The notes beneath the pieces are model-generated. The model ran no database searches, was not told where the DNA came from, and saw nothing but the letters and a program-made list of their open reading frames with translations. Made by a program: the position numbers and the translations under genes. DNA of 63,983 bases, filler included, from Octopus bimaculoides (lineage: Eukaryota): the NCBI RefSeq assembly GCF_001194135.2. It is 9 parts of 9 records of this genome, joined end to end, with 100 filler letters (N's around TTAATTAATTAA, not from the genome) between each part and the next. Parts side by side here need not be neighbours in the genome. Positions count along the whole stretch, not along the records: positions 48,428 to 54,294 come from NW_026361930.1; 8 more parts are not named here. One strand, 5' to 3'. Positions 1 through 54,294 of the stretch are shown here, one piece after another; within the stretch, counting starts at the first letter, position 1; every line of letters starts with the position of its first letter.

Positions 1-43
<43 letters not shown>

Positions 44-60
44 TGTATATATATATATAT

Positions 61-300
61 AAATATATTGTCCTGAAGACGCGGCAATTAACAATAAATG
101 CAGACAAAGATGTAAATTTTGCAGTTGTGCGTTAATTGCTGCAGAAGCATATGTAGGTGCAAAAATGAAAAGAAATAATTAACTGCTGAATAAAACTCGA
201 TATAAATCTCTGTTCTCCTTTGATATGTATGTATATTGCGTTATTTCTTCTTATTCCTTATGTTTGACGGATTATGCTGTATTTCTTATATATGTTCATT
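61..300 (+). mobile_element. Penelope-like terminal-repeat remnant with hammerhead-like fold
   Basis: CTGAAGA (73-79), 12-bp stem GCGGCAATTAAC/GTTAATTGCTGC (81-92/131-142), then GAAG-CATATGT-A. Confidence 0.4.
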
Positions 301-1151
301 GAGGGGGTGCGATATGTTGAGTCGTTAACCCAGTGTTTTAATTCTTTAACTAATATATATATATATAACAAATGAAAGACAGAAGATGGAATATATGCAT
401 GTATGGGTACAGGACGTCCGCAATTGTAAACAAAATGAGTACGAAAACAAACAGGTTAAATACGCAAACAACGAGAGAAAAAAAACTGAAAACAGAATAA
501 GTAACACAAAGGACGATCCTTCATCAGTTGTCGGCTGACTATCTACTCCTCATTTCGAGCATTCAATGACAATATGAGTCTTCGAAGACAGTTGCTCCCA
601 TAACTTCCAAAATAAATTTTGGATTTTATGGAGGGTCAAACTCCATAAAATGGAGCGGAAACTGGAGAGGACATGAAATGTAAAAACCAGACTGGATTAG
701 TTTATGCGCAACTCCATTGTCTCCCGAGACAAACAGATGCCAACAATACANNNNNNNNNNNNNNNNNNNNNNNNNNNNNNNNNNNNNNNNNNNNNNNNNN
801 NNNNNNNNNNNNNNNNNNNNNNNNNNNNNNNNNNNNNNNNNNNNNNNNNNNNNNNNNNNNNNNNNNNNNNNNNNNNNNNNNNNNNNNNNNNNNNNNNNNN
901 NNNNNNNNNNNNNNNNNNNNNNNNNNNNNNNNNNNNNNNNNNNNNNNNNNNNNNNNNNNNNNNNNNNNNNNNNNNNNNNNNNNNNNNNNNNNNNNNNNNN
1001 NNNNNNNNNNNNNNNNNNNNNNNNNNNNNNNNNNNNNNNNNNNNNNNNNNNNNNNNNNNNNNNNNNNNNNNNNNNNNNNNNNNNNNNNNNNNNNNNNNNN
1101 NNNNNNNNNNNNNNNNNNNNNNNNNNNTATATATATATATACATGCATATA

Positions 1152-1192
<41 letters not shown>

Positions 1193-2312
1193 AAAATAAG
1201 TACTAAGCTTAAAAAATAAGCCTTGGAGCAAAACATTTCACAGCAGTGCTCTAGCATGACCACCGTCAAATGACTGAAACAAGTTAAAGAATATATATGT
1301 GTATTTATATATATATATATGTGTGTGTGTATGAATGTATGTATATATATATATGTGTGTGTATATATAAGTAAGTTTATCTCATATATATAGAGATAGA
1401 TAGATAGATAGATAGATAGAAACACACACGTAGAGATAGATATTGAGATAATTAATGATAGTGAAGAAATACATAAAACTCCGTCTAGACAACCTCAATG
1501 TAGGAGTCAAATTATAACATCAAAGAGTCCAAGGTGAAGTATAAACCCATTTAATCTCAAGGATCCATCCCAATGTACAGGTCTATTCAAAGCTATAAAA
1601 CACTTCAATGTACCTAACATACCGGTAGAAGAGTACCTGAACGAACCAACAAGACAATAAAGTACCATAGCCAAGTTTTCGTACACTCCCGTTTTTTCTG
1701 ACTAAATTACTATGATTCAATCAATGTATTAAATATCTTGTTATAGTATTATGATCGACTTTCGATATTAAACATCTGGGTAGGGCATTTAGGCAACTCT
1801 AGGCTTTTTAGGTCAATCTGCAATTGCTCAAGTTTGTTTTGAAATGGGTGTATGTGTGTGTGTGCGTGTGTTACATGTATGTATTATATATGAATGTATA
1901 GCTGCATACGTGTACGACACACAGGGGCATGCGCGCGCACACACACACACATACATATATGTATTTGTGTATGTATACATACATATATATGTATATATAT
2001 ACATTTATATATATTATGTATATTATCATTTAATTGAATGCCACGCATCCATTTCCAAGTAAGTTTATCCTAACCTTTTTGATGCGATTCTACTCTTTAC
2101 TGTTTTCTTCCTCGATCCTTCTCTAATGTCCTTTTTCTCCCCTTCACCGTTTTCTATCTCTCTTTCTCTCCCTTTCTTTCTTTTTCTCTCTCTCTCGTTG
2201 CTCACACGTGACCATCGTCCATCTTTCTTTCCCTCACGTGACCATCTTTCTTTGCATTCGATTAATCTCATCCTAAAGTTACTGGCCTCGTGTCAAAATT
2301 TAAATTCAAAAG

Positions 2313-2790
2313 TAGTCAGCCGGCAGAATCGTTAACATGCCAGACAAAATACTTAGCGGTATTTCTTCCGGTTTTATGTTCTGAGCTCAAATTTTCCGTC
2401 GTGGTTGATTTTGCCTGTCCTCCTTTTGATGTCGATGAAATAAGTTCCAGTTGAGCACTGGAGTCGATGTAATCAACTTGCCTTCTCTCCCAAAACTTCA
2501 GGCCTTGTGTCTATAGTAGAAAGAAAGAAAAATGTACCAAAGAAAGTCATTTTCTCTGGAAATGAAAATTAATCTATAAAATTAACTAGCAGAACCGTTA
2601 GCACGCTAGGCGAAATGCTTAGTGACATTTCGTCTGTTTTTATGTTCTGAGTTCAAATTCCACCGAGGTCAACTTTGCCTTTCATCCTTTTCAGGTTTGA
2701 TAAAATAAATACCAGTTGAGCAATGGGGTCGATGCATTCGATTAAGCCTTCCCCCAAATTGCTGGTCTTATGTCAAAACTGGAAACCAAT
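2313..2790 (+). mobile_element. Two tandem copies of the abundant tRNA-derived SINE family M
   Basis: Copies at about 2313-2524 and 2584-2790 share the head (ggcagaatcgttagcac..gcttagcgg..tctgagttcaaatt) and core (ttgcctttcatcctt..gtcgataaaataagtaccagttgagcactggggtcgatg) seen in more than 10 copies in the window. Their 3' tails differ. Confidence 0.85.
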
Positions 2791-3147
2791 ATATAAAGAT
2801 TAACTTCAAAATTTAAAGAGTTTAACAAACTGCAAAACAGCTCAACGTGAACGAAGTAAATTATTAGAACAATCTACAGAAACGAAGAAAAGAAATCGCT
2901 GAATCTCCAGTAGCTTTAACATTCATATCATACGTACGTAAAAACAGTATTGAAGCAGTAGATAAAAGATGTAAAAAAAATAACTTTTTCGCATACAAAC
3001 ACGATAGTCATATTTATTTTGCCGATTTCAATGAATCATTATTTCAATTTTGTTTGTACGTTTTTATTTAATAACATCATTAAAAACGTATGTCCGTCTT
3101 TTTTTTTTACCACGCTCTCGAATTGCATGTTGACAAGCAGAAGACAA

Positions 3148-3178
<31 letters not shown>

Positions 3179-3264
3179 TACTGTAAGGCACTCATACATG
3201 AATACATACATATACATATATATTTATACACATACATACATATATATATGTGTGTGTGTGTGCG

Positions 3265-3510
3265 TTTATCCATCAATCTCTGCGCATTATTCCTTGGAGG
3301 ATCATGGGATAGAGTCGTAAGTCACCTCCTCCGTAGGGTCCTACCAGAAGTAACCATCATTAGACTACCCAGTTGAATTCCCAAGCATTTCCAACTGAGA
3401 CCATGGATATTATCCAACCATCTCCTTCTTGGTCTACCCCTAGTCTCCCGCCGGTTGGTTCGACTTGAAGAATGCGTGATGCGATTCTTTCTTGTGACAT
3501 TTTAATCACA
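3265..3510 (-). mobile_element. RTE-clade LINE 3' fragment (degenerate)
   Basis: Frameshifted minus-strand translation MSQERIASRILQVEPTG/RGRPRRRWLDNIHGLSWKCLG matches the RTE ORF C-terminal motif GxRxRGRPxxxW. Confidence 0.7.
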
Positions 3511-3516
3511 CACAGA

Positions 3517-3556
<40 letters not shown>

Positions 3557-4566
3557 GCACACACACACACATACACACACACAAGCACTTACACATATAG
3601 TTCACAAATGATATCCAGATATTCTTTGTATAGAGGACACTTAGTAACGCACAAAAAATTCAAACTTAGACTCCAATGTCTTTACAGGGCATCATTCCAC
3701 AAGGTAAAGAAAGGCTATAAGAAGGATCAGGTTGAGCGGGTATAGAAGCAATTATTGAGATAAGAAAATAAAACACATCAAATATATTTAATATATTAAT
3801 ACACTTAGCTATCAACATTTAATCATTCCATCTTTGAACTTATCTGTATTAAGACCTGATGTTGGAGGCTCGTCTCATCCACACGACTGCATTTTGTAAT
3901 GGACTAAATCTGCTAACATTATTAGGGATCTCTGAGCCCCCAGAGTCAGCTGTCGGACTCATAATACCTTTATCATTTGTACTCTGTGTAAGTTGCACCT
4001 ATTTATACACTAGTATATATATCTATTAATGGCACTGTGAAGATTTGTAAGACATTCCAAAATTTCTCCATCTGAGATTCTTATGTATATGCTTCGCAAC
4101 CAACACATCAACTCAACTACATATTTACAAATACCGAGAACTCTTAACTCAAAAAGTCTTTTCCTTTTGTGAGCGGCCGGTTATCAACAAGAAAAATCAT
4201 ACATATCGGCACAAGGAATAGTTTCCAGTCTTCTTTCTTTCTTTCTTTCTTTCAACACAAGGAATATTGATGGCACGTTCTCATCTAGACTTCTACGAAG
4301 AGTAGACATAACAGACCTGCTATTGTTATTTGGAGCTGAAAAGACGCCATTGTATAGTCAAAGAGGTCAGTGGTCCTGCAAATGTGAAAATCTCTTCGAA
4401 AAACATCGAGAAGGAGAATATCTATGAACAACTACTTTGAAATTTGCAGCTCTTTTATCCGGATTATAAATTTATATACATACCAATAATTATTGGTATG
4501 TATGTAAAATGATTATAATCATTGGTGCGCACAGTTATATTGGTGAATGTCTAATCAACAATCTTA

Positions 4567-4953
4567 GGAGGCGCAATGGCCCAGTAGTTAGGGCAGCGGA
4601 CTCGTGGTCATAGGATCGCGGTTTCGATTCTCAGACCGGGCATTGTGAGTGTTTATTGAGCGAAAACACCTAAAGCTCCACGAGACTCCGACAGGGGATG
4701 GTGGCGAACCCTGCTGAACTCTTTCACCACAACTTTCTCTCACTCTTACTTCCTGTTTCTGTTGTGCCTGTAATTCAAAGGGTCAGCCTTGTCACACTGT
4801 GTCACGCTGAATATCCCCGAGAACTACGTTAAGGGTACACGTGTCTGTGGAGTGCTCAGCCACTTGCACGTTAATTTCACGAGCAGGCTGTTCCGTTGAT
4901 CGGATCAACTGGAACCCTCGACGTCGTAAGCGACGGAGTGCCAACAACAACAA
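4567..4953 (+). mobile_element. Full-length tRNA-headed SINE, family A, with (CAA)n tail
   Basis: Head GGAGGCGCAATGGCCCAGTAGTTAGG..GGTTTCGATTCTC (A/B-box-like), (CAA)n tail, flanked by AATCAACAATCT (4553-4564) and AATCAACGATCT (4953-4964) as a probable TSD. Near-identical copies at 9842-10228 and 13094-13410. Confidence 0.9.
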
Positions 4954-5664
4954 ATCAACGATCTGGAGAGGCTAGGACTTTCAAGCGAAAAAGAGAACGA
5001 CTAACACCAACTTTGCAGATGCAATGTGTAAGTGAAACAGTATAAATATGAAAGACTTGCCCAAAGTTAAATACGTAACGATTATTGTTATTGTTAACCA
5101 ATTTTCTTTCTTTCTTAGAAACCAGTTCTCTCCTCTAAGGGAGAATGCTAATAACGAAAGTGACACCATACTTACAAACATATGTACGTGTGTGTGTATA
5201 TGTACGTACGTATGTATGTTTATGTTTACATACATACGTATATACATACATACATACAAGCATACACACATACATACATACATACATACATGCATACATA
5301 CATACATACATACATTCTCACACACCGACACCTACATACAATTTGGTTTACAAATTTACGTTGTTAATATACATTAACGAAAAAAAAGACAAAAGAGGAA
5401 GAAGAAGAAAAAAAACGGAAAGATCCTCTTGAAAATAATTATATAAAAGCTACAAACAAAAACATCCCACCAACGTGAACAACAACAAGAAAATCCATTT
5501 ATGGATTAGCAAATAACAAATAGGAAAGAATAAAAATGTAAATTTACATGTAAATTTAACATGTTTCTCTACGAAACCCTTTTATTCAGTGAAATTTTGT
5601 AGGCGATATTCATTCTTAGTATAAATAAAGCTGGTTTGATTTTTAAATAACAAATAGTTTCCAG

Positions 5665-5740
<76 letters not shown>

Positions 5741-6249
5741 GTGTGCTCTCTCAATAACTGTTTCCGGTCTCAATCTACTTTTGTAACAAGAGGATTTGCC
5801 TAATAATTATTTATATATTCACGTTCTCTAGTCGTCCCTGTTAAAGTAGAGGTGGTATTTGATCGTAATGGTGTTAGTAGTTGCAACAGCTGTAATAGTA
5901 GTAGTAGTAGTAGTAGTTGTTGTTATACTGAAGTAATGGTGGTGGTAACATTGACAATAGTAACACAACAAGAGGCATAGCTGCCGTATGATTAAGGCGT
6001 TTGCTTCAAAACCACGATGTTCCAGGTTTGATCCCACACAGTGGAATCTTAAGCAAGTCTCACTCTTGGACTATATTCCAGGGTAACTTAAAAATGTTTT
6101 GGCGGTAACAGTACGAAACACTATTCTGTATATATGGTTTCTACACTGCTGATTTTTCCCGACCGGGCAGTCAGTGTTGTTGACCGGTTTTAGCTAAAGC
6201 TACGTTTTTAGATCTGCTCAGAGTTACCTCCCTTCGGTATTTCCCATTG

Positions 6250-48327: not shown

Positions 48328-48917
48328 NNNNNNNNNNNNNNNNNNNNNNNNNNNNNNNNNNNNNNNNNNNNTTAATTAATTAANNNNNNNNNNNNNNNNN
48401 NNNNNNNNNNNNNNNNNNNNNNNNNNNATATATATATATTTATATATATATATATATGCATGTTTGTATGTATGTATCGCCATTCTTGAACGCTAGCTTT
48501 TTTATCCTCTCTGTGTTTATTTCCTCATGTTCCTTTCTGTTGAAGCGCCTAGGCTCAAAACATAAAAAATTTTCTCATCTTCCTAAGCATTAAACTAAAA
48601 CAACCTGTTTGTTGTTTCCATTGACTTAGCTACACCATTATTTGAAACCTCCTCTGATATGTGGCATTTGATGAATGAGGAACCCTTAACAGGAAGAGAT
48701 GCAGTTTTGTTTTAAAGACACATCTACACCATGCAGGTCTCTCAGGTATTTTGGAAGGATAAAAAAGAGCCGTGAGCCCTTAAAGCCCAAGCTGTTGCAG
48801 TATCTGGTCCTGTATTTTGATGGTAATGCTGAGATTAAAGAAACGATAAAGAAGAGACAACTGGAAATACTTTATTTTTGGTTTTGTTTTATCCCTCTTA
48901 GAATATATAGTAATAAA

Positions 48918-49118
48918 GATTTTTAAATTTTGGCACAAGGCCAGCAAATTTAGGGGTGGTGGCTTGTTGTTTACATTCACCCCAATGTTTAACTGATTCT
49001 ATTTTATTGATTTTAAGGATAAGTCAACCTTGGCAGAATTTGAACTCAGAACGTGAAGACTGATGAAATGCTGCTAAATATTGTAACTGGCGGGCTAATG
49101 ATTCTGTCAACTCGCCAT
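48918..49118 (-). mobile_element. SINE family M in the intron just upstream of the VAMP exon
   Basis: aaattttggcacaaggcc tail, ggcagaatttgaactcagaacg, ctaatgattctgtcaactcgcc head. Confidence 0.8.
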
Positions 49119-49204
49119 CTTAAAATAATAATGAAAATGTGATTTCATTTTTATTTAGAAATATATTTTCCTCTCTTAATGATTATTTTCTTAATTATTT
49201 TTAG

Positions 49205-49335
49205 GTCTGTTCCAAATAACGACCACATTGTTCGACTAAATGAACAAGTTAATGAAGTTACTCGTTTGCTTAAGACCAATGTTGAAAAGATTGTTGAGCA
49301 TGGAGATCGACTTGACAATCTGCAGACACGCTCAG
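49205..49335 (+). CDS. VAMP: Internal coding exon of a synaptobrevin/VAMP-family R-SNARE (VAMP4/VAMP8-like; subfamily unresolved)
   Basis: T-rich tract plus AG acceptor (ttatttttag, AG at 49203-49204) and donor G|gtaaat (GT at 49336). Translation SVPNNDHIVRLNEQVNEVTRLLKTNVEKIVEHGDRLDNLQTRS aligns without gaps to the R-SNARE motif (cf. VAMP2 [30 protein letters not shown]). The exon starts in phase 2 and ends in phase 1. Other exons were not confidently located. Confidence 0.88.
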
Positions 49336-49415
49336 GTAAATGTTTTATTAAATCAGAAAATAGTAAAAATAAGCCCAAAATTCAAGATTGTTATATGGAA
49401 AATAAGTTAATATTA

Positions 49416-49479
49416 TGTATGAGGTGGTGTCTTTTGTATGAGGTGGTGTCTTTTGTATGAGGTGGTGTCTTTTGTATGA
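49416..49479 (+). repeat. 19-bp tandem repeat x3.4
   Basis: Three perfect copies of TGTATGAGGTGGTGTCTTT plus TGTATGA. Confidence 0.95.
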
Positions 49480-50046
49480 TGCATTTCCTTTACAGGTGAG
49501 TTCAGCAGATATGGGTTGAGTAGTTCCACCCATGTGTAGTGATTAGTATCACTATCAGATGGTTAACTGTTGATATTATTGTTTCTCCAATACCAGCATG
49601 AAAGATCACTAAAACATAGTAATGGCTTGTTTTACTACATCTGCTGCAAAACATGGTGTTACCACATGTTTTAATCTGTCACTTCTTCTTTCATCAGCAT
49701 CTACTTAGAATATTTGCACTACCAACTCTGGCTTTTTATGACATCCATTTGGATCATACTCAAGGATTAACTGTTATACATACTGCAAATATCTCCTAAT
49801 ACATCTGTTGTGCGCTAGGATAATTAGATTTACTTATTCATTTCTAAATATTATAATCATGGATTATTGTTTCATTTTCTGTGGTTCTATGTCTAATAGT
49901 CATGTACAATAATGTTCAGAGAATAATAGTGGTTTTGACACCTGTGACATCCTGTCATGACAATTCATCAGGGAAATAGTTCACTGGAGAGAAAAGAATT
50001 GCTATGTAAATATGAATTTGAGTTGGATCACGAAAACTTCAATATG

Positions 50047-50279
50047 TTCTTATTTCTTTATTGCCCACAAGGGGCTAAACATAGAGGGGACAAACAAGGA
50101 CAGACAAAGGGATTAAGTCAATTACATCGACCTCAGTGCATAACTGGTACTTAATTTATCAACCCCGAAAGGATGAAATGCAAAGTCGACCTCGGCAGAA
50201 TTTGAACTCAGAATGTAATGGCAGACGAAATACCACTAAGCATTTCGCACGGTGTGCTAACATTTCTACCAGCTTGCCC
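50047..50279 (-). mobile_element. SINE family M variant with a distinct LINE-like 3' tail
   Basis: Family M head and core at about 50118-50279. Tail (minus) gacttaatccctttgtctgtccttgtttgtcccctctatgtttagccccttgtgggcAATAAAgaaataagaa. Confidence 0.85.
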
Positions 50280-50356
50280 CTTTTCTCTGGAACTATCAGA
50301 CAAACTTATATCATTCATATATAAAAACCAAGTTATAGCTTTTAGTTTTACATGTT

Positions 50357-50505
50357 ATGGCTGTGTGGTTAAGAAGTTCACTTTTGGACCCTATGGTTAG
50401 GGGTTCAGTTCCACTGTGGACACACTTGGCTGGTGACTTGGACAGTAGCTATAAGCTGAACAATACTTTGTGAGTGAAATTGGTTGACAGAAACCAAAGA
50501 TCCCC

Positions 50506-50520
<15 letters not shown>
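50357..50520 (+). mobile_element. SINE family C 5' half; other partial copies at about 40390-40535 (+) and 61890-62045 (-)
   Basis: tggctgtgtggttaagaagtt..gggttcagttccactgtgg..tactttgtgagtgaaattggttgacagaaac, then (TG)n. Confidence 0.75.
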
Positions 50521-50542
<22 letters not shown>

Positions 50543-51585
50543 ATGCACACACACACACACTCACACACATATATATGGAAAAAGTGAAAGGGATACAGTG
50601 AACTTGCCATGAGGAGTGGAATGTCCAATGTTTCGGATTCAATCCTTCATCAGGGGCAGAGAAAAAGAGAAGAAAAGGAGAAAAAAGTCAGAGTTTACAT
50701 CCTCTCAGCTTAAAAAATTGGCTGCAACTGATAATGGACACAGAATAACACAGGCTTCTAACGTGAAACAGAAGTTATAGGAGAGTGCATGCAGAAAGGA
50801 AAAGGGTGGTGGAGAGAGTAGAGGTAAGTAAATACAGGAATATTTCAAGTCTTGCCAATGCAGAGCTATCTGATTATTGCCTGATTATTACATATTTTTT
50901 ATCGGATGAATGTAAGTTCGCCCTGAAAGCTTGTATAGAAATAATCAGTATATGACCTAACTTATTAAACAAAGTTCAACAAATTCATTCATATTTATGT
51001 AATGGAGGAGATTAGATGTTAAAATGGATTATAGTTTTTATTTTTCATATTGCTATACAATTGTTTCGTACAAATGGACTAAGATTTTCATAAATAGAAA
51101 ATTGTAATAATCATATTTGCAATCTTCAATAGCTGATACAAAAACTAAAAGAGACATTTGAAGTACATAGATTTTTTTCTTATTTATCATTTTCGGATTA
51201 GTATATTTGTTCTTCTAGTCATGTCTATTTGAATCAAGACTAAAAAATATATTAAGTGGGTGCTAATATATGTAATATTAAAAACTGACACTCTCTCTAT
51301 GAAATCCAATATGTGTCTCTATTTAAAACTCCTTAAATGAATTTTATTACTGGTCAAGCTGTATTTGTATGTACGTTGAGAAATACCAAATAAGGAGGTA
51401 TATGTATTTTCAAATACATACTTACTTTTTACTTAACCGTCAGTTTTCCTTTTGACTTGAGATATTTTTAGAAACATTGGTGATTAGTACTAGTATTAAA
51501 GAATAATTTCTGGTTTATAAAATTTATAATTTAAGTATTTATTGTTCTATATTTAAGAGATGAGGAATTATTTACATTATATGTC

Positions 51586-51825
51586 CACGGGCATATGGCG
51601 TAATGGTTAAGAGCGCAGGCTACTAACCCCAAGATCGGAGTCCGATTCCAAATAGTGACCTGAATAATGATAATAATAATAATAATATCGAAAAAATATC
51701 GTAGGAATGAGAACCCAGGTTCAAAATTTCTCCAAGACACCTGATGAAGGCTGGAGGGTATATCAGCCAAAACGTTGTGTTAACAACAAACAAGATGAGG
51801 ACAAATTTCCATCAAATGTAAATTA
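51586..51825 (+). mobile_element. tRNA-headed short element (family F) with internal (AAT)n and minimal hammerhead-like module
   Basis: A box TGGCGTAATGG (51596-51606), B-box-like GTCCGATTCC (51640-51649), tRNA-Ser-like TGGTTAAG..CTACTAACCCC, (AAT)n spacer, then GACAC-CTGATGA-A-GGCTG/CAGCC-AAAA-CGTT-GTGTT (51736-51781). Confidence 0.75.
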
Positions 51826-52294
51826 AGTATTTATTGTAAATAATAGGTTTAATATTCATAGACAAAAATAAGTGTTATATGTTGTAATTAATTATCTAGG
51901 TACAGCTTAATATATTTTTAAGATTTAGAAATAAATTCTATACAAGGTCGAAAAGAAATAGTGATTACTTACGTGATAAACTTATATATAATCAGATATA
52001 GTACCATCTAGTATATAAGAAAGGTTTCATTTTTTGTTAGTGTATGTCGAAATAGTTGTGTATGTTTTCATAGAGAGGGAAAACGAACCAAAAATAAGCT
52101 GGTGTAATTTGTAGTAATGTAGGGGATACAATAATTAATATGCTGCGATATTTACAGATATTATACGGGTGTACATAGATTTATATATACAAATGTAAAT
52201 ACACTAACACACTGATATAGAAATATGTACACTCAAATACTTGTGTATACATACCAATGCACATATAGTTATATATACCCACACAGCCATATAT

Positions 52295-52713
52295 ATATGC
52301 TGTGCGTGAGAAGACCCGGCAAGCCAAGTAAGATCGTTGCCAGTGCCCCTGGACTGGTTCTTGTGCGGGTGGCACATGAGATGCACCATTTTGAGCGTGG
52401 CCGTTGCCAGTACCGCCTGACTGGCTCCTGTAGGATTTTCGAGCGAGATCGTTGCCAGTGCCCCTGGACTGGCTTGTGCGGGTGGCAAATAAAAGACACC
52501 ATTTCGAGCGTGGCCGTTTTCGTGCGGGTGACACGTAAAAGCACCCACTACACTCTCTGAGTGGTTGGCGTTAGGAAGGGCATCCAGCTGTAGAAACTCT
52601 GCCAAATCAGACTGGAGCCTGGTGTTGCCATCCGGTTTCACCAGTCCTCAGTCAAATCGTCCAACCCATGCTAGCATGGAAAGCGGACGTTAAACGATGA
52701 TGATGATGATGAT
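52295..52713 (+). mobile_element. RTE LINE 3' UTR-only copy (same family as 58390-59563)
   Basis: gatatgctgtgc.tgagaa..ggcaagccaagt junction, internal subrepeats, ttggcgttaggaagggcatccagctgtagaaactctgcc, catgctagcatggaaagcggacgttaaac, (GAT)n tail. Confidence 0.88.
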
Positions 52714-52729
52714 AGGTATATATACATCC

Positions 52730-52764
<35 letters not shown>

Positions 52765-53026
52765 TACATACATACATAAATACACACATACACATGCATG
52801 TACATTCCTACATACACATCGTTATATACACACACATATATGTATAAGCACTCAATAGATACTTACATACTGGTAGGTGGGCATATATGCACATATACAT
52901 GTTTTTAAAAGTTATGATTTGTAACTTGGATAACTGGATATTCAGGTATATTATTATTTTGTAATATATGCATACATATATCCACATATATACATACATA
53001 GATATATACATATACAAATACACATA

Positions 53027-54294
53027 CAGGGGTTGGACAAAATAATGGCAACAACTTAAAATTTCAACCAAATTTTAATATGGGGTAGGACTGCCTTTGG
53101 CAGTAATTACAGCTTGCATTCTACAAGGTTCTTACAAAGTTTGAATTGTTTCTGAAGGAATTTGTGTCCATTTTTCAGCTAAAACAGTCTCCAGTTCTTG
53201 TAGTGATGATGGTGGAGGATATTAACTCCTTGGTTTTCTAAAATGCACCATAGATGTTCAATGATCTTGAGATTTGGGGACTGTGGTGGCCAGATAAGAT
53301 GTTCAGCTTCACTAGAATGTTCCTAGTGCCATTCAGTAACAACTTTGGCTGTGTGAATTGGTGCNNNNNNNNNNCACTAGAATGTTCCTAGTGCCATTCA
53401 GTAACAACTTTGGCTGTGTGAATTGGTGCATTATCATCCTGAAAGATTGCGTTTCCCTCCAGAAGTAGTTCTGCAACAACCATAGGATGAATTTGATCAG
53501 ATAAAATGCTTAAATAGTCTTGACTATAAATTCTGCTATGAAGAGAAACCATTGGGCGGGCGGATTTCCAAGTGTATCCCCCCCCCCCACATCATCACAG
53601 ATCCTCCTCCATGTTTAACAGTTGGAATAAGGGAAGTTTGGATCAAATAATTCTTTTGGCTATCTCCACACGTACACTTGGCCGGTGGTCAGAAATAAGG
53701 TAATGGATGACTTGTTTGAGAAAATAACATTCTGCTCTAGGGACAAATTCTGTAGGTTTTTACTCCACTCTAAATGCTTTGCAATGTTTGTTTTTGAAAG
53801 TAGTGGTTTTCTGATTGCAGCCTTCCTGTGAAATCCGACTCTGTGCAGCTCCCAGTAAACAGCTTTTGTGGAAACTGGGTTCTCGAGGTGGTCATTAAGC
53901 TCTACAGTACTTTCAGGAGCTGTACTTTTGTGATCCTCTCTAATAATTCGCATAAGAGTCCGACCGTCCCTATCTGAAAGTTTTGGCTTTCTTCCGGAGA
54001 TTTGCTTCGGCGAGGAGGTTTTTCCCTCTTTCTCAAAGGCTGTCATTACTTTCAAGACAGTACTTCTTGATACACCAAACATTTCAGCTGTTTTCGTTAC
54101 ACTAGCACCTGCCATACGAGCACCTAACAATTTGACCTCTTTGAAAGTCTGATAGATCTGTTATTATAATGAATCTTAATTACCTCTTTCTATTGGTATC
54201 TGAAAAGAAACAGCAATTTTAACAAAACATATTAAGCAACTCTAATGATAAATAAAAAAAACAACATAAAAATAATCAAGCTTTTAATGGTTTT
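53027..54294 (-). mobile_element. Decayed Tc1-like DNA transposon with DD36E spacing; 5' TIR lost in gap
   Basis: TA then CAGGGGTTGGACAAAATAATGG terminus at 53027. HTH region GARMAGASVTKTAEMFGVSRSTV..SGRKPKLSDRD, AAIRKPLLS, FQDDNAPIHT, WPPQSPNLKIIEHLW. One premature stop and frameshifts. Confidence 0.9.

What the first reader, a model, noticed from the sequence alone, without database searches (positions are those of the whole stretch)
49299..49301. R-SNARE whose zero-layer Arg is genomically His (CAT), one A-to-I edit away from Arg
Seen: the exon aligns without gaps to VAMP2 residues 31-67, and NVEKIVE-H-GDRL places His exactly at the ionic layer (VAMP2 R56 in [12 protein letters not shown]). 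The codon is CAT with the A at 49300. Established: inosine is read as G, so editing CAT gives CGT = Arg; coleoid cephalopods recode mRNAs extensively by ADAR; the 3Q:1R zero layer is a conserved feature of SNARE bundles. Inference: editing could toggle this VAMP between a non-canonical H-SNARE and a canonical R-SNARE, giving a tissue- or temperature-tunable switch on vesicle fusion or on NSF/SNAP disassembly. Caveats: the neighbours (5' C, 3' U) are not the optimal ADAR context, and I found no obvious nearby editing-complementary sequence.
Basis: partly seen in the sequence, partly recalled or inferred. Interest (0 to 1): 0.8.

Follow-up and report, generated by a model that had tools for sequence, protein, structure and literature searches.

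The report
Octopus SNARE with histidine centre
An Octopus bimaculoides vesicle-fusion protein (a short VAMP4/5-like brevin) carries histidine in its genome where every relative found has the hallmark central arginine, but nothing available here shows that RNA editing restores the arginine, so for now it is an unusual single-residue variant.

Summary
Window 49205-49335 (+) is a spliced coding exon of an Octopus bimaculoides brevin (XP_014790153.1/XP_014790154.1). CAT at 49299-49301 puts His exactly on the zero-layer Arg. The exon is real: Pfam Synaptobrevin matches, exon structure is the same in Argonauta hians, and pN/pS there is 0.1-0.2.

The His is derived and unique. Of 133 aligned homologues, 129 have Arg, including Argonauta (AGG) and a cephalopod-like transcript (CGA). 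Only the three entries for this one octopus gene have His.

The gene is not the neuronal synaptobrevin. It belongs to a mollusc-wide family of short brevins, closest to VAMP4 and VAMP5.

The editing idea could not be tested, because no RNA-derived copy with H or R exists in the collections. Indirect evidence is neutral to negative:
- The neighbours are 5'C and 3'U.
- The A sits at the loop edge of a weak 11-14 bp hairpin (z -1.4) that Argonauta does not share.
- No complementary partner stands out in 21 kb of pre-mRNA.

A to G here would count as "restorative" editing, a known class in coleoids with low typical levels. The most likely reading is a tolerated lineage-specific Arg-to-His substitution. 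An assembly error or private allele on this unplaced scaffold remains possible.

The parts
49205..49335 (+). Coding exon (131 nt) of the O. bimaculoides brevin gene. It starts with the G that completes an AT|G start codon and ends with the G of the next codon (G|AA). It encodes SVPNNDH...LQTRS, which is SNARE layers -7 to +3.
   Evidence: Translation. Pfam PF00957. 100% identical to XP_014790154.1 = P0001. Same exon and phases in Argonauta hians at L001 22467-22642.
49299..49301 (+). CAT = His at the zero (ionic) layer. The A at 49300 is the proposed editing site.
   Evidence: Among 133 aligned homologues, 129 have R, 3 have H (all this gene) and 1 has N. Argonauta has AGG and the Logan transcript L002 has CGA at this codon.
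49179..49204 (+). Intron tail ending in the acceptor AG (49203-49204). The in-frame ATG at 49179 is the start used by the RefSeq models (MIIFLIIFR...). It is most likely an annotation artefact, because the true first exon lies off the scaffold.
   Evidence: The piece is bases 1-5867 of scaffold LGKD02067058.1. The Argonauta model splices M|SAQ... into the same acceptor.
49336..49341 (+). Splice donor gtaaat.
   Evidence: The spliced product continues EKLEDCS... from L005 13195.
49288..49321 (+). Local hairpin: AGAUUGUUGAG (49288-49298) pairs with CUUGACAAUCU (49311-49321). It has 11 bp including two G-U pairs, plus up to 3 weak extra pairs. The CAU codon lies at the 5' edge of the loop.
   Evidence: MFE is -13.6 kcal/mol, z -1.39. 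P(paired) of A49300 is about 0.35. The hairpin does not form in the Argonauta sequence.

Best explanation
The exon belongs to a functional, selectively constrained Octopus bimaculoides gene. The gene encodes a short tail-anchored brevin of about 120 aa: MSVPNNDH..., then the SNARE motif, a transmembrane helix and a short luminal tail. It belongs to a mollusc-wide family of longin-less R-SNAREs closest to VAMP4 and VAMP5, and it is not the synaptic VAMP2 orthologue.

In the octopus lineage the invariant zero-layer Arg codon was replaced in the genome by CAT (His). The likely path is a G-to-A transition from CGT, a CpG-type change (inferred). I take the protein to be made and used as encoded, so the central layer is 3Q:1H. 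Neutral His can still hydrogen-bond with the three Gln, so the bundle should assemble with at most a modest loss of stability or register fidelity. This resembles the R-to-Q zero-layer mutants that work in yeast exocytosis and in Drosophila Ykt6. RNA editing is not needed for this explanation.

Shown: the exon, the codon, the homology, the derived state of His, and purifying selection on the gene. Inferred: the mutation path, tolerance of His, and the absence of substantial editing.
For: - Exon, codon and register.
- Identity with XP_014790153.1/XP_014790154.1 and with scaffold LGKD02067058.1.
- Full spliced ORF with intact splice sites, and Pfam E 7e-27 over all 89 model positions.
- Constraint against Argonauta: pN/pS 0.20 overall and 0.11 in the SNARE motif, dN/dS 0.08.
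- Arg in 129 of 133 homologues, and His only in this gene.
- No excess of other O. bimaculoides-specific changes in the motif: my reading of alignment A2.
- Zero-layer Arg is dispensable in some R-SNAREs (yeast exocytic complex, Drosophila Ykt6 R164Q) but not in others (PMC5937789).
- His occurs naturally at the zero layer of the fungal Qc-SNARE Syn8 (PMC11204939).
- No dsRNA partner stands out for the site.
Against: - Arg is otherwise invariant across about 45 mollusc orthologues and nearly all other R-SNAREs found. A free ride for His is therefore not a given. In yeast, Sec22 and Ykt6 do not tolerate R-to-Q (PMC5937789).
- Coleoids edit heavily, and A-to-G here would restore the ancestral residue, the class reported as enriched among edited sites (PMC6881472).
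- The base call rests on a single assembly, on an unplaced 25.7 kb scaffold.
- No transcript of the gene was seen, so expression in Octopus is itself unverified.
Confidence: 0.55

Rival explanations
1. Restorative (harm-permitting) A-to-I editing. ADAR converts A49300 to inosine in a useful fraction of transcripts, so many protein molecules carry the ancestral Arg. That would have allowed the G-to-A substitution to fix. The reader's 'tunable switch' is the adaptive sub-case, which I rate at roughly 0.02-0.03.
For: - CAT to CGT gives Arg.
- Arg is ancestral and otherwise invariant.
- The gene is under purifying selection, so loss of a key residue calls for an explanation.
- In coleoids, restorative sites are edited more often and at higher levels than synonymous sites (PMC6881472).
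- A small local hairpin does include the site.
Against: - No RNA evidence of any kind.
- The 5'C and 3'U neighbours are not the preferred ADAR context (established knowledge).
- The hairpin has only 11-14 bp, scores z -1.4, puts the A at the loop edge with P(paired) 0.35, and is absent in Argonauta.
- The best long-range duplex is -38.6 kcal/mol, against -37.0 +/- 2.6 for shuffled targets.
- Even among real restorative sites the median level is below 2.5%, and only about 13% exceed 20% in squid.
- The gene is not a neuronal-type VAMP, while coleoid editing is concentrated in neural tissue.
Confidence: 0.09
2. The His is not a fixed feature of the species. It would be a base-call or assembly error, or a private or heterozygous allele of the single sequenced animal, carried on an unplaced (possibly alternative-haplotype) scaffold.
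For: - The piece is the start of a 25.7 kb unplaced scaffold with 3168 N.
- An N gap at 53365-53374 is flanked by a perfect 55-nt duplicate, a typical assembly artefact.
- All three H entries derive from this one assembly.
- No second Octopus species or individual was available for comparison.
Against: - Consensus base errors are rare in deep short-read assemblies.
- The rest of the exon reads cleanly and is conserved.
- A CGT-to-CAT change is an ordinary real mutation.
Confidence: 0.2
3. The gene is losing its function in Octopus, and the zero-layer change is an early disabling hit in a gene now under relaxed constraint.
For: - No transcript-derived copy from any Octopus is in the collection, while the related cephalopod-like transcript family is seen on about 100 Logan contigs.
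- No orthologue from other annotated Octopus genomes turned up.
Against: - The ORF, all splice sites and the transmembrane anchor are intact.
- pN/pS is 0.11 in the SNARE motif.
- There is no excess of O. bimaculoides-specific replacements at conserved positions.
- Missing transcripts may only reflect what the collection holds.
Confidence: 0.1

Closest known systems
VAMP4 (early-endosomal/TGN R-SNARE; structure 2NPS)
   Same: Best solved-structure match for the exon (E 1.8e-6, 43% identity). 38% identity over 89 residues of the whole protein. Same E-x-G-[DE]-[RK]-L-D-x-L-Q motif around the zero layer.
   Different: The octopus protein has His instead of Arg. It has only about 6 residues before the SNARE motif, so it lacks VAMP4's roughly 50-residue N-terminal sorting extension. 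The juxtamembrane sequence is CWKN rather than WWRG. It has a luminal tail.
VAMP5 (myobrevin)
   Same: Very short N-terminus, an NEVT motif, LQ-RS after the zero layer, a CW-N juxtamembrane motif and a Ser/Thr/Pro-rich tail after the transmembrane helix.
   Different: Orthology is not established, and scores are lower than for VAMP4. VAMP5 has Arg.
Mollusc-wide short brevin family, variously annotated 'VAMP8-like', 'VAMP4-like', 'VAMP3-like' or 'synaptobrevin-1-like' (for example Aplysia, Mytilus, Biomphalaria, Argonauta hians)
   Same: Clear orthologues, with E 1e-28 to 1e-51 against the family profile. Same length and architecture, and the shared core EVT-LLK-NVEKV--RG.
   Different: Every other member has Arg at the zero layer.
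Restorative (harm-permitting) A-to-I recoding sites of coleoids (Jiang and Zhang 2019, PMC6881472)
   Same: A genomic A whose reading as G would restore an ancestral, conserved amino acid. [quoted passage not shown]
   Different: Editing has not been shown at this site, and the structure and sequence context are unfavourable.
Natural or engineered non-canonical zero layers (fungal Syn8 with His; yeast Snc and Drosophila Ykt6 R-to-Q)
   Same: A polar, non-Arg and non-Gln residue in the central layer of a SNARE that is otherwise normal. These cases show that such layers can be functional (PMC11204939, PMC5937789).
   Different: Syn8 is a Qc-SNARE, not the R helix. The R-to-Q cases are laboratory mutants. 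A natural His on the R helix was not found among the 133 homologues examined.

Membership tests
Synaptobrevin/brevin family (Pfam PF00957) | Sequence homology of the SNARE motif plus membrane anchor to the family profile | tested here: met
   The exon alone scores E 1.1e-7. The spliced 120-aa product scores E 7.1e-27 over profile positions 2-89 of 89.
Synaptobrevin/brevin family (Pfam PF00957) | Heptad pattern of hydrophobic layers around a central polar layer, followed by a C-terminal transmembrane helix | tested here: met
   Ungapped alignment to solved VAMP4/8/2 motifs. Layer residues are I8, L11, V15, V18, L22, N25, I29, H32, L36, L39, S43. The TM segment LILGFVILLLLGIIVGVIVG lies in the next exon.
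R-SNARE in the strict sense (3Q:1R rule) | Arginine at the zero layer | tested here: not met
   The genomic codon is CAT = His. Of 133 aligned homologues, 129 have Arg. Whether mRNA restores Arg cannot be tested here.
Neuronal synaptobrevin (VAMP1/2) orthologue | Closest similarity to VAMP1/2, the ERDQKL zero-layer motif and the WW juxtamembrane motif | tested here: not met
   VAMP4 outranks VAMP8, which outranks VAMP2, for the exon. Identity is 31% to VAMP2 against 38% to VAMP4. The motif is EHGDRL, of the ERG type, and the juxtamembrane sequence is CW.
VAMP4 orthologue | Long N-terminal extension with sorting signals ahead of the SNARE motif | tested here: not met
   The start inferred from the Argonauta-supported splice (AT|G) leaves 6 residues before the motif. 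The first exon itself lies off the scaffold and was not seen.
Restorative A-to-I recoding site | Genomic A whose A-to-G change is nonsynonymous and restores an ancestral amino acid | tested here: met
   CAT to CGT gives Arg. Arg is present in Argonauta and in all other relatives.
Restorative A-to-I recoding site | An A/G mixture in RNA with pure A in genomic DNA of the same animal | not testable with these tools
   No RNA-derived copy is in the collections. Nothing was found in the held supplements.
Restorative A-to-I recoding site | The site is embedded in a double-stranded RNA substrate for ADAR | tested here: inconclusive
   There is only an 11-14 bp hairpin with the A at the loop edge, z -1.39 and P(paired) 0.35. 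The 401-nt fold scores z -1.07. The best distant duplex is within the shuffle range. Prediction cannot exclude a substrate.

The most novel reading that the evidence does not exclude
A49300 is edited at substantial and regulated levels, varying with tissue or temperature. The octopus would then make both an H-form and an R-form of this brevin. This would be the first case of RNA editing rewriting the defining zero-layer residue of a SNARE, and a clean natural example of harm-permitting or restorative editing at a residue that is invariant across eukaryotes.
Probability: 0.06. Interest if true: 0.7.

Novelty: new variant of a known kind. Interest (0 to 1): 0.35.

Why it matters
The zero-layer Arg defines R-SNAREs and is almost invariant. 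A natural, selectively maintained brevin with His there gives a ready-made test of how much the 3Q:1R layer matters, for example by comparing H and R forms with their cognate Q-SNAREs.

The site is also a sharply defined test for the harm-permitting model of coleoid editing. It is a single base in a conserved gene where the ancestral state is certain. If RNA-seq shows no editing, the finding reduces to a tolerated residue variant or an assembly issue, of modest interest.

Tried and rejected
1. Word-indexed homologue search with the 43-aa exon found nothing. The exhaustive HMMER search was needed to find the protein.
2. I looked for other exons in the piece by tblastn. Only this exon is present. 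The rest lies on L005 at 13195-13338 and 20457-20542.
3. Exact look-ups of the intron-read-through ORF and of the inferred full-length H and R proteins found none of them in the collection. RNA evidence could therefore not be obtained this way.
4. I searched the held supplements of PMC8382921, PMC9989829 and PMC9068888 for VAMP, synaptobrevin, SNARE and XP_014790153. There were no relevant hits. The Cell 2017 editing paper was not held under the PMC id I tried, which I recalled from memory.
5. Rfam scan of the piece returned only sub-threshold microRNA-model hits on TG/TA microsatellites, which I rejected as low-complexity noise. No tRNA was found.
6. I considered whether intronic repeat pairs could form dsRNA around the exon. 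The two SINE-like copies flanking the exon are direct, not inverted, and the listed inverted repeats are all microsatellite matches.
7. I compared two near-identical Logan transcript proteins (P0043 and P0137) for editing-like differences. They differ by A/V and S/T, which are not A-to-G type changes, so this was uninformative.
8. Pseudogene idea: the intact ORF and low pN/pS argue against it.

Full report
**What is there**

The piece (window 48428-54294) is identical to bases 1-5867 of the unplaced 25,713-bp scaffold LGKD02067058.1 of the Octopus bimaculoides assembly GCA_001194135.2. Between an acceptor ttttag|G (exon starts at 49205) and a donor CAG|gtaaat (exon ends at 49335) lies a 131-nt exon. 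Read from 49206, it encodes SVPNNDHIVRLNEQVNEVTRLLKTNVEKIVEHGDRLDNLQTRS.

The exon alone passes Pfam's Synaptobrevin threshold (E 1.1e-7). It aligns without gaps to the solved SNARE motifs of VAMP4, VAMP8 and VAMP2, with His opposite the zero-layer Arg. The a/d positions (I8, L11, V15, V18, L22, N25, I29, H32, L36, L39, S43) match layers -7 to +3.

**Which gene**

An exhaustive HMMER search found a 100% match, P0001. This is XP_014790154.1, and its cluster mate is XP_014790153.1, annotated 'VAMP4-like isoform X2' and 'synaptobrevin-1[-like]' of O. bimaculoides.

The rest of the gene lies further along the scaffold, at L005 13195-13338 and 20457-20542, with canonical splice sites. Both RefSeq models start at an ATG inside the upstream intron (49179, MIIFLIIFR...). 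In Argonauta hians the same acceptor receives an upstream exon that ends in AT, giving M|SAQ.... The real octopus protein therefore most likely starts MSVPNNDH, and its first exon lies beyond the scaffold end.

The spliced 120-aa product matches the whole Pfam model (E 7e-27). It has a transmembrane helix and a short Ser/Thr/Pro-rich luminal tail.

**Family**

A profile search retrieved about 45 mollusc proteins of the same length and architecture (E 1e-28 to 1e-51). Their annotations are inconsistent: VAMP8-like, VAMP4-like, VAMP3-like or synaptobrevin-1-like. Next came longin-type VAMP7 proteins of other phyla.

Features that resemble VAMP5 are the short N-terminus, the NEVT motif, the CW-N juxtamembrane motif and the luminal tail. 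The gene is not the neuronal synaptobrevin orthologue.

**Is the His derived, and is the gene alive?**

In a MAFFT alignment of 133 homologues, the zero-layer column holds 129 Arg, one Asn, and three His, all from this one octopus gene. The octopod Argonauta hians has Arg (AGG). A cephalopod-like Logan transcript has Arg (CGA). Arg is therefore ancestral. The likely route to CAT is a G-to-A transition from CGT (inference).

Between O. bimaculoides and Argonauta, pN/pS is 0.20 over the whole coding sequence and 0.11 in the SNARE motif. dN/dS is about 0.08, with saturated dS. The other octopus-specific replacements in the motif are few and conservative. The gene is constrained and is not an obvious pseudogene.

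**The editing hypothesis**

[quoted passage not shown] That class is edited more often than synonymous sites in coleoids. Its median level is nevertheless below 2.5%, and only about 13% of such sites exceed 20% in squid.

I could not test editing directly:
- The 90% cluster of the protein holds only the two genome-derived models.
- Neither the inferred H nor the inferred R full-length protein, nor the intron-read-through ORF, is in the collection.
- The held supplements of three cephalopod editing papers do not mention the gene.

Predicted structure gives little support:
- The 401-nt fold around the exon scores z -1.07.
- The site sits at the 5' edge of the loop of an 11-14 bp hairpin (49288-49298 pairing with 49311-49321). 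That hairpin has MFE -13.6 kcal/mol and z -1.39, and P(paired) for the A is about 0.35 in every context, including the spliced CDS.
- The hairpin does not form in Argonauta.
- A scan of 21 kb of pre-mRNA for a complementary partner gave a best duplex of -38.6 kcal/mol. Shuffled targets gave -37.0 +/- 2.6.
- The 5'C and 3'U neighbours are not the preferred ADAR context (established knowledge).

**Most likely explanation**

I take this to be a lineage-specific Arg-to-His substitution that is tolerated as encoded, giving a 3Q:1H central layer. The literature shows that zero-layer Arg is dispensable in some R-SNAREs (the yeast exocytic complex and Drosophila Ykt6 R164Q) and essential in others (yeast Sec22 and Ykt6) (PMC5937789). 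His occurs naturally at the zero layer of the fungal Qc-SNARE Syn8 (PMC11204939). I give this explanation 0.55.

The rivals are:
- An assembly error or private allele, 0.2. The scaffold is unplaced and gap-ridden, and the base rests on a single assembly.
- Incipient loss of function, 0.1.
- Restorative editing, 0.09. The regulated 'switch' version is a small part of this.

**Novelty and score**

The gene is annotated, but I found no description of its non-canonical zero layer, and no natural His on the R helix among the 133 homologues examined. It is a new variant of a known kind. It is interesting mainly as a sharply testable candidate, since one base and one RNA-seq pile-up decide it. Interest is 0.35. 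If substantial regulated editing were shown, I would put it at about 0.7.

Noticed in passing
window 53660-54130 (-), possibly continuing to 53388: A 156-aa ORF carries Tc1/mariner-type transposase HTH domains (PF01498 E 4e-9, HTH_23, HTH_7). It is an intronic transposon remnant, and the catalytic part appears broken into short ORFs.
   Followed up: partly
window 49021-49116 and 50183-50278: Two direct copies (71% identical) of a SINE-like element contain GGCAGAATTTGAACTCAGAAC, one in each intron flanking the exon. They have the same orientation, so they would not pair with each other. ARAGORN finds no tRNA. Related repeats at 52550-52713 have many copies in the Argonauta locus.
   Followed up: partly
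window 53310-53429: A 10-N gap (53365-53374) is flanked by a perfect 55-nt duplicate. This is a typical scaffolding artefact and a reminder that the local assembly quality is modest.
   Followed up: no
window 49416-49479: A perfect 19-nt tandem repeat (TGTATGAGGTGGTGTCTTT, 3.4 copies) lies 80 nt downstream of the splice donor, in the intron.
   Followed up: no
window 49179-49204: The RefSeq models XP_014790153.1 and XP_014790154.1 begin at an ATG inside the intron (MIIFLIIFR). By comparison with Argonauta, the true start is an AT|G split across an upstream exon that lies off this scaffold.
   Followed up: yes
P0065 (ENA metagenome protein): This is the only other non-Arg zero layer among the 133 homologues: Asn in ...DKALQNVEDLD.... 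Its organism is unknown.
   Followed up: no
L002-L004, L006-L011 (Logan transcript contigs): Cephalopod-like relatives of this brevin (P0004, P0043, P0137; 42-44% identical overall, with a 15-aa identical core NEVTRLLKTNVEKIV in P0004) are seen on about 100 RNA-derived contigs. No Octopus transcript of the gene was found. The species of these sequencing runs were not identified.
   Followed up: partly
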